Below are positions 13,246 to 19,553 of a stretch of DNA of 64,000 nucleotides, one piece after another. A program made the position numbers and the translations under genes. The stretch spans positions 62,001 through 126,000 of the forward strand of contig CDMY01000241.1 of NCBI GenBank assembly GCA_001179505.1, in the 5' to 3' direction. The notes under the pieces were generated by a model, which saw only the letters and a list, made by a program, of their open reading frames with translations, searched no databases and was not told the origin of the DNA. Origin of the DNA: Vitrella brassicaformis CCMP3155. Its lineage: Eukaryota > Protista > Chromerida. Every line of letters begins with the position of its first letter. The stretch's first letter is position 1.

Positions 13246-14333
13246 TCATTGGGAGACACGAAACAGAAACGACAGCAAGGGCCCGGTTTCGGTGAAAAGC
13301 ACGTCAAGCCTGTCGCCATGCTGCAAGGACAGCCGCTTGTCGGCCCCAACCGTCAACGGCTGATGCCCCTGCCTCAGTAGCCACACCTTCCTCCCTGCAG
13401 GGGCACTCGCATCTACTGCAAATGGCTGACCGGGGGCAGAGCATGTGAATACAAGGTGCTCTCGACTGATGGCCGTCACCACCTGAGCACACACACGCAC
13501 AGAGACACGGGGGCGGGATCCATGAGTCAATAAGACAAGGAGACGCTTCCTTCACACCTATGGGACGAGGCAAGAAGTGAGGACATGCTCGTATGCGTCG
13601 CCCCCCCTGCCAAAAGGGGGAGGTGCCACGTGAGATCCGTCCTTCTTCCTCCTGAACAGGAGGAGCCGCTCCAGCTTGCGCGTGAAGTCCGTGTCCCTGC
13701 ATCCCGCCTTGACGATGGCCGGCTCCACCAGCACCTTCATCATTGCCACAACCTTCTCCTCATCCATGAAGGCCACAAAGCTGCCGTGACGAGACCGCCG
13801 CTCGAGTGCATGTGCAGCATGGTTTGTGGAAGGCGCTGCTTCCGGAGCCTGAGTCTCATTGTGTGGGCTTGTTGTTGCTCTGGGAGGCCGAAAGACGGCG
13901 GCGATTGCGATGCCATTGCTGCTTGGAACGACTGGAGAGTACTCTGGAGCTGGCTGTGGAGGTCCTCTAGCCTCACAGCTGAAAGCGACCTCTCCGGCGA
14001 CCTCTCTGTCTTGCGGTCTTGTCGCGGCGCAGGGCCTTCACCCACTGCAAAGCCAGTGTCTTGGGGCGGTGGCTCGTCGCCTTGCGAATATCCCCGATGA
14101 CTTGCTTTGCTTTCGTCGTCTCTGATGATGGCCCCACGGCCGCTCATTTTGTCCTCGGAATGCGTCCGCCGCTTGTCTGGCTTTGCAGAAATGTCAGCCT
14201 CTTCCCTCTTGTCGTGGTCCTCTTGGCTCTCTTGCTCGGACAGGGAAGAATCCGCTGAGTACTCCGCTTCGGCCGCGTGTTGAAGGGAGCTGAACAGCGG
14301 AAGTGGGGCGCAGAAGGAATGCGAGCAGCCCAT
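13246..14333 (-). CDS. FHA-domain protein with an MGCS N-terminus; apparent frameshift near 13860
   Basis: The C-terminal exons carry the FHA motifs FGRG and ISREH. The N-terminal ORF starts MGCSHSFC and contains a coiled-coil-like stretch. The two parts are in different frames with no intervening GT-AG intron. Confidence 0.6.
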
Positions 14334-14388
14334 GGCTGGCGGTGGGACAGCACTACCGGGGAAAAAGTAGATTGTTTCCCCGGGTAGA

Positions 14389-14414
14389 GAGCGGTTTTCA
14401 GGCAGCGGTTTCAC
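14389..14414 (+). promoter_or_regulatory. Candidate AGCGGTTT(T)CA cis-element, two adjacent copies between divergent genes
   Basis: GCAGCGGTTTCAC (14402-14414) is identical to the reverse complement of 3586-3598. CAGCGGTTTCAG occurs at 21110-21121. Confidence 0.35.
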
Positions 14415-14627
14415 GGAATGCGAGCTCCGCCTTTTTCGATCCTGTGGGGGGATGAGTTCAGCGGACTGATGTTGACTTCTGCTGGAGAGCCGCAGCCAGC
14501 GCCTGTAGCAGCGCGTAGCAGCGCACATGGGTCAAGTGCCTCGGGCTGGACCCATGGCAATGACCGATTCTTGGGCCGATTTGGCTACCGAAACGGTACA
14601 CATACATGCCCAGACAAGAAGCGAATA

Positions 14628-16340
14628 ATGGCCAGCATCCCTCATCTCCATCACCATCTGCTGCTTCATGTGTGGCCCATTGAATGGCAGGTCTTTGAGT
14701 GTGTCTGCGAGCGCGCCAGGCCGGGCGACGAGCTGTTCGTCGTTGGCGAGAGTAAGAACCTTGGCGGATGGGAGGTCGACAAGGGTGTGCGGCTGGACGG
14801 CACGAACCACCCTTTGTGGCGAAGCGCTAAGGTGCCTCTGCCGGTCGATCTGCCCATCTGGTTCAAGCTTGTACGACGAGTGCGCAATGGACGGCATGAC
14901 TGGGAGCCAATCGATGGTGTGTGGAGATGACAGACGACGATGTCTTCTGGATGGATGGATGGATGCTTCTTTGTGGCGATGCATGGTCAGGCAACCGGCT
15001 CATGAAACTCTCCGAGGTGCACAGTAAGTTGGTCACCGTCAAATGTGTATTCGGTGAGTGGGGATACAGCCAGCCAGCCAGCCAGCCACACCTCACACAC
15101 GCGAAGACCCTGTACGTTGGTTGCGTCGATGTGTGTGGCCACACCTGTTGCTGCTTTATAGGCGAGGAAGGTGTGACACTTGAGTCCGTCGCTGGCGATG
15201 GCGGGCGGGAGGCGTCCGCCATGGCTGCATCTGCATCTGTGACGGCTGGCCGCGCGAGTAGCACATACACACGACGGCAGCAGCAAACAGACCACGACGG
15301 TGCGTGGCATCGAGCGGACACATGTCGAGTGACAGAGAGGTTCTATGGTGGTGCGGTGTGTGTGTTGTTGCTTGCCTTGTTCAGGCGGTGCACGCCACAC
15401 GGCGTCACCCGCTGCTGGAAGGACTACTGCAGAATCTGTTGTCGCACAGAAGGTGAGCAAAGTAGGAAACACAGTCACACACTCATCGCAGCCTGACATA
15501 CTGACTCTGTATGTGCAGACGAATGTGGGTGAGGATAGGCATGACACTACAATGGACCGTCACACACACACCGAAGGTAAGACCCTCCACGCCACAACCA
15601 GGCAGACAGTACACGTAGCTGTATGCATCATCCCTGCGTGTTTGCCTGCAGGGCCGCTGGCTGAGGGCTTTTCAGCCATTCCGACTCTTCCGGCCACCGA
15701 CAACGCCGCACACTGCGTCGCCAGGACCTACTGGAAGTCCCCCCCAGCAGACCCGCAATCGCCGCCGATGAGCCAGTCGCCACTTACACATCAACAGCCG
15801 CAGCAGCAGGAGGCTGGGGGCGCGAGGGTCAAGAAGAAGAACAAAGTCAACAACGTGGGGATTCAGCCCACGCAGCCACACCCTGGACCCCTGATGCCGC
15901 CCCACCACCAGCACCCACAGAATAAGGATCATTACCGTCCTGCTGCATCCATCGTCCCCACCGGCAGCCCCATCCCCCGCAGCACCGACCAGCCACAGCC
16001 CCCCTCCCCTGCAGCACTCACACGCCCAGCTGGGAGCGGTATCGATGTCACAACCCCCTCCTCGTCTTCATTCGACCTGGACGCCATGTACCGATTCGCC
16101 ATCGACGGCGAGAACGTCTTGGATGCCTACAACGGATGGCTGCAGTGCCTGAAGGCCAATGTAGGCGGCCGGGGCGGCGGTATGTTGGCTGTGGAGGCCA
16201 AAGAGAGTGTCGAGAAGGGGCCGAGGGGCGGCTTTGAGCATACCATCGAGTGGACGATGACGGGGCGGGTCAACCAGACGATTGCGGTGAGTGAATGGAA
16301 GAGCGGATGAGAGGTGTAGGAAAGGGTGATGTATTCTTTG

Positions 16341-16375
<35 letters not shown>

Positions 16376-18869
16376 TGTGGTAAGTGCAGGTGGTTGGCGA
16401 GGGCGCCAACGAGTACGAGGCGCGTCGTGATGCGGCGAGGCAGGTGCTGCAGAGGACATGGCGCATGCAGGGGTGCGAGCCCGACACCGAGGAGCTACCC
16501 CTGCTGACCCGCCGTATGGCCAACCGCCTCCGTAATCGGCTGAGGGCAAAGGGCAGCATTGCCCTCAGCCACACCAGCAGAGGGCAGCACGAGTGTCGTG
16601 TCCAGTGGCGCATCCCCACGGCAGACGAAGAGCTGGAGCTGGAGGGGCGCGGCCATGGTCCGGCGGCGGAAGATGCCGCGGTGCAGGCGCTCATGAACGT
16701 CTACATGCAGGCTTGCCAGGTGGCTGAGTGGGTGGCTGACTGGGAGAGGCCCAAGATCCCCCACCCAAGGCCCCCAAGGAGCCTGTGGCGCCACAGCCAC
16801 AGCCCGCGTCGCAGCGTTCGAGTATAGGCATGGGCGGAGGGCATGTCGAAGAGGGGCAAAAGCAGAGCGGGCCCAAACCTGCAGCAGCAGCAGCAGCAGC
16901 AGCGGAGGGAGAGGGCGACATTGACGAGTTTGCCGAGTTGGAGGTGGCATGGAGGAGCGGCGCTGGGGGTGGCGACGGGGAGAGTAACAAGGAGGAGAGG
17001 AAGAAGATCGAGGCCGATCGCCTGTCAGACGAAATGTGTGACAAGAATCGCATTCGGGAGGCGCTTTCGCGTCACAGAGAGGTCCGTCAGACAGCCAGCC
17101 AGCCGGCTACCAAAGGAGGCCAGCAGATGATGGCACACATACAGAGATGATGGTGTCTTTCTCTCTTTCTCTCCCTGTATGTGTGTGCAGGTGCAAGAGG
17201 AGGGGCGCAAGGCCAAGGTCGAGACGGCAGGGGCGTGCCGGCTGGCCAAGGTGTCCTCTCTGGGCGCTCGCAGTGTCCCTACAGCGGGGCTGGACGAGAG
17301 GGCACTTCGCTTCACGCCACCACCTGACGGTCTGCCGCCCACACCCCCTCCCAAATCATCGTCTCCGTCAACACCTGGCATCCCCTTCCCGGGCCCTCTC
17401 CCCCGTGTGTCATCCGCCGCCCCACGCATCCCATCGGCCGGCAGCCATCCGGAGGCCGTCTTGGTCAGGCGCCCACAGGGCCCAGTGGAAGGAGCGACGG
17501 CGCACACCAGCCTCGAGGGATTTACCCTCTATCCCAGAAGCGGCGCGTACCACATCGAGTGGTGCGGCAGGGCAGGGGGGAGAAATGTCCGACGAGAACT
17601 GACCTGGTCAGAATCGACCTCTTCACTTGGAAGGATGACTTCTACGGGAATGACGCGAGAGCCAAGTGCCCTGGGCTGGAGTGTTTTGTGGGGGTACAAC
17701 CTCAGTTCGTCTCTGAGGCCCTTGAGGAGATGCGTGAGGACGGCCTAAGGTGGATCTACATGCCGTCGCTGAGCCTCTACCTGGAGCTCCGGCTGCTGGC
17801 CATCCTGCCAGCTGCCGACCCTTTGCCAGCGGTGCCACTTCTGCACCCTTCCCGTCCCCCACCCCCTCCGCCCCACACGCCCCACGGACAACACCACGGA
17901 TCCCACGCTGCAGCCCCGAATGCAGCCGGTTGGAGGGGCGGTGCTGTGGCCGTCTCAAGCGCAGTGCACACGGCTACCCCCTGGCGAACAGGCCCGCCCC
18001 AGCCACCTACCGTCCCACCACCATCTCTCCCTCCACAGTTTCGTGGGCTGACGGAGGGGGCCAGGCCAGCTGGCCGGTGGGGCGATGCCGGCAAGGGCAG
18101 GCACCCACCGCCCCCACCTCCACCACCCCCTCCGCCCCCGCCAGATACCGCGCACAATGCCACGGCTGCTCGTGGGTAAGCGAAGGAAGAGGTGCATGCC
18201 GCCCTTCGATGCCCCACACTCCTTGGTGCTGTCCGTGTGGTGTGCAGGCCTGCGGACCCGTATCTCGAGTCTGAGCTGAAGCGCGAGAGAGAGGCGCACC
18301 GGAGGGAGCGAGAGGAGCTGAGGCAGCGGCTCCAGCAGCTCGAGGAGACTAATCGCAGGTGAGAAAGAAAGACACACAAGCATCATGTCATAGTAGAACC
18401 AGACCATGGCGGCTGTGGTTGGTTCAGGCTATCTGCGCTGGGTATCCAACAGCACCAGCCGTCCTCAAGGGGCCCTCCTCCACCCAATCACCCACAATCA
18501 CAGCCACAGCCACTGCAGCCGGCCGGCATCAGTGGGGCTGACACCATCGTGGCAGGCGGGTGCATCATCTGTTTCGGCGAGCACGGCCCCGCGTCCATCA
18601 TGTACGTCCCCTGCAGACACATGCACATCTGCCCCAAGTGCTACGACGACCGCAAGGACGCCTGGCAGCGGGGCCTCCCCCGAGTGAAGGCCGACAACGC
18701 CCGTCGTCAGGAGGAGAACAGGGCGCGGATCAAGCGAGATCAGGAGCCGCTGGAGCTGCGGCCGGAGGGCTACCTGTGCGAGCAGTGCCAGGGGGAGGTC
18801 GTGTTTGCCGGGTCGATGGAAGAAGTGAGTCGCTGGATGCGCCCGTTCGTGTCCCATGCACAGGACTGA
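14628..18869 (+). CDS. CBM20 + two dsRBD-like domains + Pro-rich linker + coiled coil + C-terminal RING finger; two single-base frame breaks
   Basis: CBM20 pattern: GDELFVVGESKNLGGW...LWR...FKLV...WE...NRL. dsRBD-like tails: GEGANEYEARRDAARQVL and GRGHGPAAEDAAVQAL. RING: CIIC...PCRH...CPKC...CEQC. Exons join in frame except at C5 (16771-16775) and G6 (17575-17580), where one extra base would restore each frame. Confidence 0.65.
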
Positions 18870-19553
18870 CTGACTGACTAAGGATAGCAGGCGGGCAGTA
18901 AGTAATCAGACAGTGGGGAAGGGCATGTACATAATCCTCCATATATATCTGTGGGTGTGAGTACTGAATACGTTTGGCTGGTTTCTGTGTCACGTATCGA
19001 TGGGCTGCGGCTCAGCCAGACTCTCGTGGCTGCGCTGATACCCCACGACAGCCACGAGAGAGAGAGAGAGAGAGAGTAGACGGTGGTGGGCACTGAGTGA
19101 GTTGAAGGTGGGTGCTGTGTTCGCCTGTATAGATCGGCTGTTTCCGCATCATGTAGTTCATCAGCAGGTGCCGGTCCAGTCACGAGCAATGTGGCTGCGT
19201 GCTGCCGCCTGGCGACGAGTGGCATGATGCAGAGACAGCGATAAAAGACAGATTGGGTGGCTTGCTATGAGAGAGAGAGAGGCAACCACATACCATTGCC
19301 GGGTTGGTTTTCGTCTGCATGGCTGTTTCTGCTTCAAGTAGTTGGTCGTTGCGAGGCTGTGGGTCAGCCACATTCTCGTGGCTGTTTGCTGCCGCGTCGC
19401 AACGAGCGACCCGATGAAGGATCAGCCATTCAGGCGGACTCGTCCTAGCAAAACAAGACCGACAAGTGTGTCTGTCTTGATCGAGCCGAGAGAGTCTGTG
19501 CATGTCTATCGTTAACCTTAGGGGGTCGCTGAGAAGGCGAAAAGGGGTGAGGG

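What the first reader, a model, noticed from the sequence alone, without database searches (positions are those of the whole stretch)
14628..18869. Starch-binding CBM20 fused to dsRBD-like domains and a RING finger
Exon phases link an N-terminal CBM20 through two dsRBD-like folds, a Pro-rich region and a coiled coil to a C-terminal RING. This requires adding one base at each of two homopolymers. The first frame's TAG (16827) lies 2 nt before the next ATG (16830), which argues for one ancestral ORF. Established: CBM20 targets proteins to alpha-glucans, animals use laforin (CBM20) with the RING ligase malin, and myzozoans store amylopectin. Inference: this is a one-chain glucan-granule-targeted E3 ligase, an architecture I do not know to be described.
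Basis: partly seen in the sequence, partly recalled or inferred. Interest (0 to 1): 0.75.

Follow-up and report, generated by a model that had tools for sequence, protein, structure and literature searches.

The report
Frame-broken starch-binding RING ligase gene
In the alga Vitrella, one transcribed and correctly spliced gene carries a starch-binding domain at the front and a ubiquitin-ligase RING finger at the back, but two real frame breaks, seen in both DNA and RNA, mean it can no longer make them as one protein, so it is most likely a young decaying gene.

Summary
The domains are real. CBM20 scores Pfam E 2.3e-13. An IAP-type RING has all eight zinc ligands. Two short coiled coils and Pro-rich linkers are also present.

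The claimed single protein is not encoded. Spliced RNA contigs from two studies and unspliced DNA contigs from two studies match the window with no gap at either break, so these are not homopolymer assembly errors.

RNA also shows:
The start is ATG 14527.
- The mRNA holds three successive frames: ORF1 (564 aa, CBM20 plus two unproven dsRBD-like units, TAG at 16827), ORF2, and ORF3 (ending in the RING).
- Break 2 is not at the G6 run. That domain is a divergent FKBP-like cassette found only in Vitrella proteins.

Neither break has a slippery site. Codon usage supports one ancestral ORF of about 1,160 codons.

Best reading: a young pseudogene, or truncated gene, of Vitrella's shuffled FKBP-like/coiled-coil/RING ligase family.

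CBM20 plus RING in one chain is already known in human RNF213. Unchecked scan notes list other CBM20-RING loci on other DNA of this genome.

The parts
14446..14595 (+). Exon 1: 5' leader with two upstream ATGs (14452, 14469) and the start of the main ORF at ATG 14527, coding 23 residues before the splice.
   Evidence: RNA contigs X4 and X5 start at 14446 and 14454 and splice from 14595 to 14691. Frames were read.
14596..14690 (+). Intron 1 (GT..AG, 95 nt).
   Evidence: Joint 14594>14690 in both RNA runs and in neither DNA run.
14691..15053 (+). CBM20 starch-binding domain, on exons 2 (14691-14916) and 3 (14991-15053), split by intron 14917-14990.
   Evidence: Pfam CBM_20 E 2.3e-13. Aligns to PDB 7CZJ and 1AC0 with the LGGW, PLW, FK and DWE motifs aligned. 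Joints.
15162..15576 (+). Three small linker exons (15162-15299, 15385-15452, 15519-15576).
   Evidence: RNA joints. No Pfam hit.
15652..16286 (+). Exon 7: Pro/Gln-rich linker, then the first part of alpha/beta unit 1 ('dsRBD-like 1', from 16071).
   Evidence: RNA contig covers 15650-16285. No Pfam hit. No relative of 179-569 aa.
16390..16739 (+). Start of exon 8: the last helix of unit 1 (to 16461) and alpha/beta unit 2 ('dsRBD-like 2', 16495-16713).
   Evidence: AF2 single sequence, pLDDT 53, order H-E-E-E-H. dsRBDs lead the Foldseek list at E >= 0.07. VIA Z about 5, not distinctive.
16740..16829 (+). Break 1 window. It is bounded by the TGA of the next frame (16737-16739) and the TAG that ends ORF1 (16825-16827), and holds two C5 runs (16758-16762, 16771-16775). 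A net -1 frame change is needed here.
   Evidence: DNA and RNA contigs cover 16455-16870 with 0 gaps. No X XXY YYZ heptamer. Codon log-odds switch frame here.
16830..17081 (+). ORF2 first part: ATG 16830, an (Ala)8 tract from a GCA repeat, an acidic stretch, and coiled coil 1.
   Evidence: Codon log-odds of +5 to +13 in this frame, which was not used for training. Splice 17081>17191 in RNA.
17191..17508 (+). ORF2 second part: end of coiled coil 1 and a Pro/Ser-rich linker.
   Evidence: RNA contigs cover 17189-18174 with no gaps.
17509..17807 (+). Divergent FKBP-type (PPIase-fold) domain, cut by break 2.
   Evidence: The first strand, in ORF2's frame, matches P0001 residues 584-598. The rest, in ORF3's frame, aligns to 19 Vitrella repeat units. 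Paralogues hit Pfam FKBP_C at 1.1e-9. The family profile hits Mip/FKBP structures at 1.1e-7.
17550..17555 (+). Break 2: two extra bases at a CACA/AT site, between the His codon (17551-17553, ORF2 frame) and the Arg codon (17556-17558, ORF3 frame).
   Evidence: Homology register. Identical in DNA and RNA contigs. Not a homopolymer and not a slippery site.
17808..18175 (+). Pro-rich linker at the end of exon 9, including a (Pro)12 tract.
   Evidence: Direct reading.
18248..18358 (+). Exon 10: coiled coil 2.
   Evidence: RNA joints 18175>18248 and 18358>18428. Charged heptad-like sequence read.
18428..18869 (+). Exon 11: linker, then an IAP/MGRN1-type RING-HC (18561-18788) with a 45-residue loop before the last Cys pair. 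Stop TGA at 18867-18869.
   Evidence: Pfam zf-C3HC4_3 E 1.6e-6, covering ligands 1-6. Weak alignments to the cIAP1, CGRRF1 and MGRN1 RINGs. RNA contigs reach about 18585 from upstream.

Best explanation
This is a lineage-specific Vitrella brassicaformis gene. It once encoded a modular RING ubiquitin ligase of about 1,160 residues, ordered as follows: CBM20 starch-binding head, two small alpha/beta units of unproven (possibly dsRBD-like) fold, coiled coil, one FKBP-like recognition cassette, Pro-rich linker, coiled coil, IAP-type RING.

In the sequenced strain two small indels split the ORF into three frames. One base is missing somewhere in 16740-16827. Two bases are extra at 17550-17555, inside the FKBP-like domain.

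Shown: the gene is still transcribed from a divergent promoter and all introns are still removed.

Inferred: ordinary translation stops at TAG 16827 and yields at most a 564-residue CBM20 protein with no RING. The locus is then a young pseudogene, or a truncated survivor. While intact, the protein would have been tethered to cytosolic starch by CBM20 site 1, dimerised through its coiled coils, and passed ubiquitin from an E2 (through the RING) onto granule-associated proteins picked by the other modules, or possibly onto the glucan itself.
For: - Four data sets from three studies match the window at both breaks: unspliced DNA contigs X1 and X2, and spliced RNA contigs X4 and X5, with 0 gaps and 0 other letters over 16455-16870 and 17189/17228-18174.
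- Nine GT..AG introns are seen only in X4 and X5.
- The spliced mRNA has three successive open frames.
- A codon log-odds model trained outside ORF2 scores ORF2's own frame best (+4 to +13). The frame switches near 16740-16815 and near 17500-17560.
- Break 2 is fixed by homology. The frame-1 motif EGFTLYPRSGAYH and the frame-0 motif RVVRQGRGEKCPT together match the paralogue motif.
- There is no slippery heptamer at either break.
- CBM20 and RING are both recognised by Pfam. The FKBP fold is supported.
- Relatives of the cassette are found only in Vitrella (9 hits among 1.84 billion representatives). One of them is a RING protein with four cassettes (P0010).
Against: - Apart from the two indels there is no in-frame stop in about 600 codons of ORF2 plus ORF3, all splice sites are intact, and all eight RING ligands are kept. 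Decay is therefore very recent, or the downstream part is still used in some way.
- Contigs drop rare variants, so a minor intact allele or isoform is not excluded.
- No single contig or long read spans from CBM20 to RING.
- Break 1 lies in low-complexity sequence with no homologue to fix its position. The ancestral continuity of ORF1 and ORF2 rests only on codon usage and on the lack of intergenic space.
Confidence: 0.55

Rival explanations
1. These are two neighbouring genes with overlapping transcripts, never one ORF. Gene A (CBM20 plus two alpha/beta units, 564 aa) ends properly at TAG 16827. Gene B starts at ATG 16830 (coiled coil, FKBP-like, coiled coil, RING) and is itself broken at 17550-17555.
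For: ORF1 ends at a normal stop and an ATG follows 2 nt later. No relative shows the joint architecture. RNA contigs cannot tell one transcript from overlapping ones.
Against: There is no room for a promoter or UTRs between the ORFs. The RNA contig 16455-16870 is continuous across the boundary, and contig depths are similar on both sides. Coding-like codon usage in ORF2's frame begins near 16740-16760, upstream of the ATG. The tail of ORF1's frame is rich in Trp, His, Arg and Ser, as out-of-frame Pro-rich sequence usually is.
Confidence: 0.15
2. An intact copy exists but was not seen. It could be a second allele, a minor variant in the culture, or a rare splice isoform that skips each break with an intron of 3n+2 nt. 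The full-length CBM20-RING ligase would then still be made.
For: Logan contigs drop rare variants (tool note). The downstream ORFs are otherwise undamaged. Word searches found no protein of 179-569, 92-294 or 99-315 aa containing these exons. This would fit a long public gene model that bridges the breaks with introns.
Against: No variant, gap or extra joint appears at either site in any of the four runs. The reads give no sign of a second haplotype in the unique parts of the gene.
Confidence: 0.1
3. Programmed recoding: two -1 ribosomal frameshifts, or polymerase slippage, produce some full-length ligase from the mRNA as it stands.
For: Both breaks need the same -1 shift, and the downstream frames are clean. 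Per an earlier scan follow-up that I did not check, the genome has an antizyme gene with a +1 frameshift site.
Against: There is no X XXY YYZ heptamer in the break 1 window. Break 2 sits at a TAC CAC ATC context with no slippery sequence or homopolymer. RNA contigs show no inserted base. Two independent recoding events in one cellular gene would be without precedent, to my knowledge.
Confidence: 0.05
4. Sequencing or assembly artefact at homopolymers.
For: C5 runs lie in the break 1 window and a G6 run lies near break 2.
Against: DNA and RNA contigs from three studies agree with the window with 0 gaps. Break 2 is not at a homopolymer at all.
Confidence: 0.03

Closest known systems
Vitrella FKBP-like cassette proteins, e.g. 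CEM38779.1 (P0010: RING plus four cassettes) and CEM32327.1 (P0001: cassette array)
   Same: They share the divergent FKBP-fold unit, with the motifs GF..PSG..H.VV..G.G..PT and MR.GE.R (27-41% identity to the unit here). Some copies are combined with a RING. The units are separated by Pro-rich linkers. Hits came only from Vitrella.
   Different: P0010 has an N-terminal RING of another type and no CBM20 or coiled coil. The unit here is single, is cut by a 2-base insertion, and deviates at the conserved MREGEVR motif (here MREDGLR).
Human RNF213 (mysterin)
   Same: It is one polypeptide that holds a CBM20-fold carbohydrate-binding domain and a RING, and it is thought to ubiquitinate non-protein or surface targets (PMC11549300).
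   Different: RNF213 is a giant dynein-like AAA protein of about 5,200 aa with an RZ finger. Its CBM20 was recognised by structure, not by sequence. There is no detectable homology beyond the two domain types, and here the two domains are no longer in one frame.
Laforin (CBM20 + DSP phosphatase) with malin (RING + NHL); TgLaforin in Toxoplasma
   Same: CBM20 brings a regulator to a storage glucan, and a RING ligase acts on glucan-associated proteins. Alveolates have CBM20 regulators of amylopectin (PMC9254107, listed).
   Different: These are two separate proteins. No DSP or NHL domain is found here. The resemblance is in working logic only.
HOIL-1/RBCK1 glycogen ubiquitination, and the engineered CBM20-HOIL-1L tether
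   Same: Bringing an E3 to glycogen through a CBM20 is enough to ubiquitinate the glucan and send it to lysosomes (PMC13345935). That is the activity an intact version of this gene could have had.
   Different: HOIL-1 is an RBR ligase that forms ester bonds, and the CBM20 link was artificial. This gene has a RING-HC.
IAP / MGRN1 / CGRRF1-type RING fingers (Pfam zf-C3HC4_3)
   Same: The spacing C-x2-C...PC-x-H-x3-C-x2-C and the hydrophobic pattern match. The best PDB alignments are cIAP1, CGRRF1 and MGRN1.
   Different: A 45-residue charged loop precedes the last Cys pair, against about 6-10 residues in IAPs. The Pfam match stops before that pair. The fold prediction failed (pLDDT 39).

Membership tests
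CBM20 starch-binding module (Pfam PF00686 / CAZy CBM20) | Sequence matches the family HMM above the curated cut-off. | tested here: met
   50.2 bits against a cut-off of 23.3, E 2.3e-13, profile positions 6-79 of 97, for exon 2 alone.
CBM20 starch-binding module (Pfam PF00686 / CAZy CBM20) | Binding site 1 aromatic and Lys residues (the Trp543, Lys578 and Trp590 equivalents of A. niger glucoamylase). | tested here: met
   The alignment to 1AC0 puts LGGW under LGDW, FK under YK and DWE under EWE. The residue numbering is from my own knowledge.
CBM20 starch-binding module (Pfam PF00686 / CAZy CBM20) | Binding site 2 tyrosines. | tested here: inconclusive
   The PLW Trp is kept, but the two Tyr positions are not matched in the 1AC0 alignment.
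CBM20 starch-binding module (Pfam PF00686 / CAZy CBM20) | Binds starch or amylopectin. | not testable with these tools
   Needs a pull-down assay.
RING-HC E3 ligase (IAP-type, Pfam PF13920) | Family HMM match above the cut-off. | tested here: met
   28.3 bits against a cut-off of 27, E 1.6e-6, covering only profile positions 5-33 of 49. Marginal.
RING-HC E3 ligase (IAP-type, Pfam PF13920) | Eight zinc ligands within the canonical RING spacing. | tested here: met
   Direct reading of 18561-18788 gives C-x2-C-x13-C-x-H-x3-C-x2-C-x45-C-x2-C. The consensus ranges are from my own knowledge.
RING-HC E3 ligase (IAP-type, Pfam PF13920) | Cross-brace fold. | tested here: inconclusive
   The single-sequence AF2 model has pLDDT 39 and is unusable.
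   The spliced mRNA has three frames, a TAG at 16827 and a second break at 17550-17555, confirmed in DNA and RNA.
   None was retrieved, but the word searches see only proteins of 0.55-1.75 times the query length. Unchecked scan notes list other CBM20-RING loci in this genome.
dsRBD (Pfam PF00035) | Family HMM match. | tested here: not met
   No dsrm hit at E <= 1 for either exon. No PDB sequence hit.
dsRBD (Pfam PF00035) | Alpha-beta-beta-beta-alpha fold. | tested here: inconclusive
   The predicted order of elements fits, but pLDDT is 53. The best Foldseek E is 0.07 and VIA Z is about 5, among unrelated folds.
FKBP-type PPIase fold (Pfam PF00254) | Family HMM or profile match. | tested here: met
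   Not by the window piece alone. Its Vitrella paralogues hit FKBP_C at 1.1e-9, and the profile that includes it hits Mip/FKBP structures at 1.1e-7.
FKBP-type PPIase fold (Pfam PF00254) | The whole domain is encoded in one frame. | tested here: not met
   The first strand is in ORF2's frame and the rest is in ORF3's frame.
Programmed -1 ribosomal frameshift | Slippery X XXY YYZ heptamer at the shift site. | tested here: not met
   None in 16735-16830. The three formal heptamers in ORF2 lie upstream of the homology-defined break 2.
Laforin-malin system | DSP phosphatase domain (laforin) or NHL repeats (malin). | tested here: not met
   No such Pfam hit in any exon.

The most novel reading that the evidence does not exclude
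Vitrella may run a whole ubiquitin toolkit aimed at its cytosolic starch granules, with CBM20 fused to RING, F-box and deubiquitinase modules at several loci. This locus could still make a small amount of a full-length CBM20-FKBP-like-RING ligase, through a minor intact allele, a rare isoform or recoding, beside a default RING-less CBM20 protein. That would be a natural single-chain counterpart of laforin-malin, or of the engineered CBM20-HOIL-1 tether.
Probability: 0.12. Interest if true: 0.7.

Novelty: new variant of a known kind. Interest (0 to 1): 0.35.

Why it matters
If it had been intact, a CBM20-RING ligase would suggest that chromerid algae regulate starch granules by ubiquitination. 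That idea is timely, now that glycogen itself is known to be ubiquitinated in mammals.

This locus shows something more modest. Vitrella builds E3 ligases by shuffling a few cassettes (CBM20, FKBP-like, coiled coil, RING), and some of these chimeras are caught in the act of decaying while still transcribed.

It also warns that gene models for this genome can hide real frameshifts, and that the right place to test the starch-ubiquitin idea is one of the other, possibly intact, CBM20-RING loci.

Tried and rejected
- **Assembly error at homopolymers.** Rejected. Four read sets agree with the window.
- **Hidden introns at the breaks.** Rejected for the main RNA form, which has no joints there.
- **-1 programmed frameshifting.** No slippery heptamers.
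Rejected. It is intronic.
- **Pfam on all exons.** Only CBM_20 and zf-C3HC4_3 were found. There was no dsrm and no direct FKBP_C hit.
- **dsRBD test.** PDB sequence search, ESM Atlas features, AF2, Foldseek, VIA wide and unit 1 against unit 2 by BLASTP (no similarity). All weak or blank.
- **RING fold by AF2.** Unusable, pLDDT 39.
- **Word searches for relatives or the public gene model.** Tried with exon 7, the RING exon and CBM20. No hits in the allowed length ranges.
- **JGI metagenome scan with unit 2.** None.
- **Other copies of the FKBP cassette in the window.** None.
- **Literature.** No paper on a CBM20-RING protein in alveolates.
Full report
**Organism and setting.** The window is GC-rich (about 59%) and intron-rich. 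Earlier notes of this scan call the genome a chromerid, Vitrella brassicaformis. Consistent with this, every relative I retrieved for one domain of this gene is a protein of V. brassicaformis CCMP3155. Vitrella stores starch in its cytosol (bioRxiv 10.64898/2026.09.25.754361).

**Gene model from RNA.** I laid the contigs of four public runs on 14200-19400.
- X1 and X2 give unspliced contigs, so I take them as DNA.
- X4 and X5, from two different studies, give contigs with GT..AG joints, so I take them as RNA.
- The joints define these introns: 14596-14690, 14917-14990, 15054-15161, 15300-15384, 15453-15518, 15577-15651, 17082-17190, 18176-18247 and 18359-18427.
- A tenth intron (16287-16389, GT..AG) lies in a (GT)n repeat that the tool skips.
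The first long ORF of the mRNA starts at ATG 14527, after an in-frame stop and two upstream ATGs.
- Three RNA contigs tile 14446 to about 16447, 16455-16870, and 16892 to about 18585. Their depths are similar (X4: 37, 35, 34). The only gaps are 7 nt and a GCA repeat.
- One transcript from CBM20 to the first RING cysteines is therefore a strong inference. It is not proven by any single molecule.

**The two breaks are real.** Both DNA and both RNA runs cover 16455-16870 and 17189/17228-18174 with no gap and no differing letter. The spliced mRNA therefore carries three successive frames.
- ORF1 runs from 14527 to TAG 16827 and codes 564 aa.
- ORF2 opens at 16740, has an ATG at 16830, and ends at TAA 17748.
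- ORF3 opens at 17328 and ends at TGA 18869.
- Each change of frame needs a net -1.

I trained a codon log-odds model on ORF1 and ORF3 only. It scores the untouched ORF2 segment best in its own frame (+4 to +13 per 25 codons). The preferred frame changes near 16740-16815 and again near 17500-17560. This supports one ancestral ORF of about 1,160 codons.

**Where break 2 is.** I searched the stretch after the second break against 1.84 billion representative proteins. It found nine proteins, eight of them Vitrella proteins made of tandem copies of a unit of about 100 residues.
- The units hit Pfam FKBP_C (1.1e-9).
- A profile of 19 units plus the window piece hits Mip/FKBP structures (1.1e-7).
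- In every unit the motif GF..PSG..H is followed directly by .VV..G.G..PT.
- In the window, EGFTLYPRSGAYH is in ORF2's frame and RVVRQGRGEKCPT is in ORF3's frame.

The break therefore lies at 17550-17555 and amounts to two extra bases at a CACA/AT site. It cuts a conserved domain at a place that is neither a homopolymer nor a slippery site.

**Where break 1 is.** It must lie between the TGA of the next frame (16737-16739) and TAG 16825-16827. This is a Pro/Lys-rich stretch with two C5 runs and no X XXY YYZ heptamer. No homologue fixes the position.

**Domains.**
- CBM20 is solid: Pfam E 2.3e-13, with site-1 Trp/Lys/Trp positions aligned to glucoamylase 1AC0.
- The RING is a marginal Pfam match to zf-C3HC4_3 (28.3 bits against a cut-off of 27). 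All eight ligands are present at permitted spacing, with a 45-residue charged loop before the last pair. Its nearest solved relatives are the cIAP1, CGRRF1 and MGRN1 RINGs. AF2 gave no usable model.
- The two 'dsRBD-like' units have no Pfam, PDB-sequence or Atlas match and no detectable similarity to each other. A low-confidence model (pLDDT 53) has alpha-beta-beta-beta-alpha order. dsRBDs head the Foldseek list only at E >= 0.07, and VIA gives Z about 5 among unrelated alpha/beta folds. I treat them as small alpha/beta units of unproven fold.

**Relatives.** Word searches with exon 7, the RING exon and CBM20 found nothing within their length limits. A JGI metagenome scan found nothing either. 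These blanks do not show absence of longer kin. They do suggest that no short public model of this locus exists, so the public model may bridge the breaks with introns.

One retrieved Vitrella protein (P0010, CEM38779.1) joins a RING to four FKBP-like cassettes. Earlier notes of this scan, mostly unchecked, describe three things on other DNA of this genome:
- the same FKBP-like cassette grafted onto many genes;
- many genes ending in a coiled coil and a RING, one of them (SRA-SET-RING) also with two frame breaks;
- several other CBM20-RING, CBM20-F-box and CBM20-DUB loci.

I confirmed only the cassette family myself.

**Mechanism and rivals.**
- Most likely (0.55): a recently broken member of this shuffled ligase family. 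Transcription and splicing persist, and translation ends at TAG 16827, leaving at most a RING-less CBM20 protein.
- Two adjacent genes with overlapping transcripts (0.15).
- An unseen intact allele or isoform (0.10).
- Double -1 recoding (0.05).
- Artefact (0.03).

The cleanness of the downstream frames argues that the damage is young. It does not by itself show function.

**Comparison with what is known.** The working logic resembles laforin-malin. It also resembles the recent demonstration that tethering HOIL-1L to glycogen through a CBM20 causes glucan ubiquitination and lysosomal clearance (PMC13345935). A CBM20-fold domain and a RING already coexist in one chain in human RNF213 (PMC11549300), so the combination is not undescribed. 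The particular set here (CBM20, FKBP-like cassette, coiled coil, IAP-type RING) is. I found no paper on such a protein in alveolates.

**Limits.** I did not send a joined or frame-corrected protein to any search or folding tool. Exons were joined only inside local scripts, to read frames and codon usage. Only contigs, not raw reads, were available, so rare variants, transcript ends and expression levels cannot be judged.

**Verdict.** It is a new variant of a known kind. Interest is 0.35.

Noticed in passing
window 18585-18797: The RING-coding stretch behaves as multi-copy. Summed contig depth is about 5 times the flanks in the DNA runs, and contigs fragment into pieces of 42-168 nt. Position 18597 reads G (Ile to Val) in all DNA contigs that cover it. 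One RNA contig (X4) joins a version with 20 differences and compensating 1-nt indels over 18707-18794 to the unique 3' flank. This suggests close RING paralogues or gene conversion. The exact sequence of this exon at this locus is somewhat uncertain, but both versions keep the frame.
   Followed up: partly
window 13740-14370, minus strand: A head-to-head neighbour gene has a likely start at 14333 and a product beginning MGCSHSF, a myristoylation/palmitoylation-type N-terminus. An RNA contig reaches 14370, only about 75 nt from the start of this gene's RNA contig (14446). This points to a short divergent promoter.
   Followed up: no
window 14452-14595: The 5' leader has two upstream ATGs. One opens a 5-codon uORF in the main frame (14452). 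The other opens a uORF of about 44 codons (14469) that overlaps the main ATG 14527 and ends after the first splice.
   Followed up: partly
window 14948-14966, 15067-15088, 16332-16387, 16871-16918: Short tandem repeats, (GGAT)n, (CCAG)n and (CT)n(GT)n in introns and (GCA)n in the coding exon, attract hundreds of unrelated contigs and break the read-based contigs. Runs of N interrupt the scaffold near 19.55-19.9 kb and 22.3-23.3 kb.
   Followed up: no
P0001-P0010 (Vitrella proteins, not in the window): The FKBP-like unit forms tandem arrays of 3-6 copies behind a shared N-terminal region that looks like a signal peptide (MVVWLF...). Outside Vitrella it gave no hit among 1.84 billion representative proteins. 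P0008 is an unrelated repeat protein and probably a spurious hit.
   Followed up: partly
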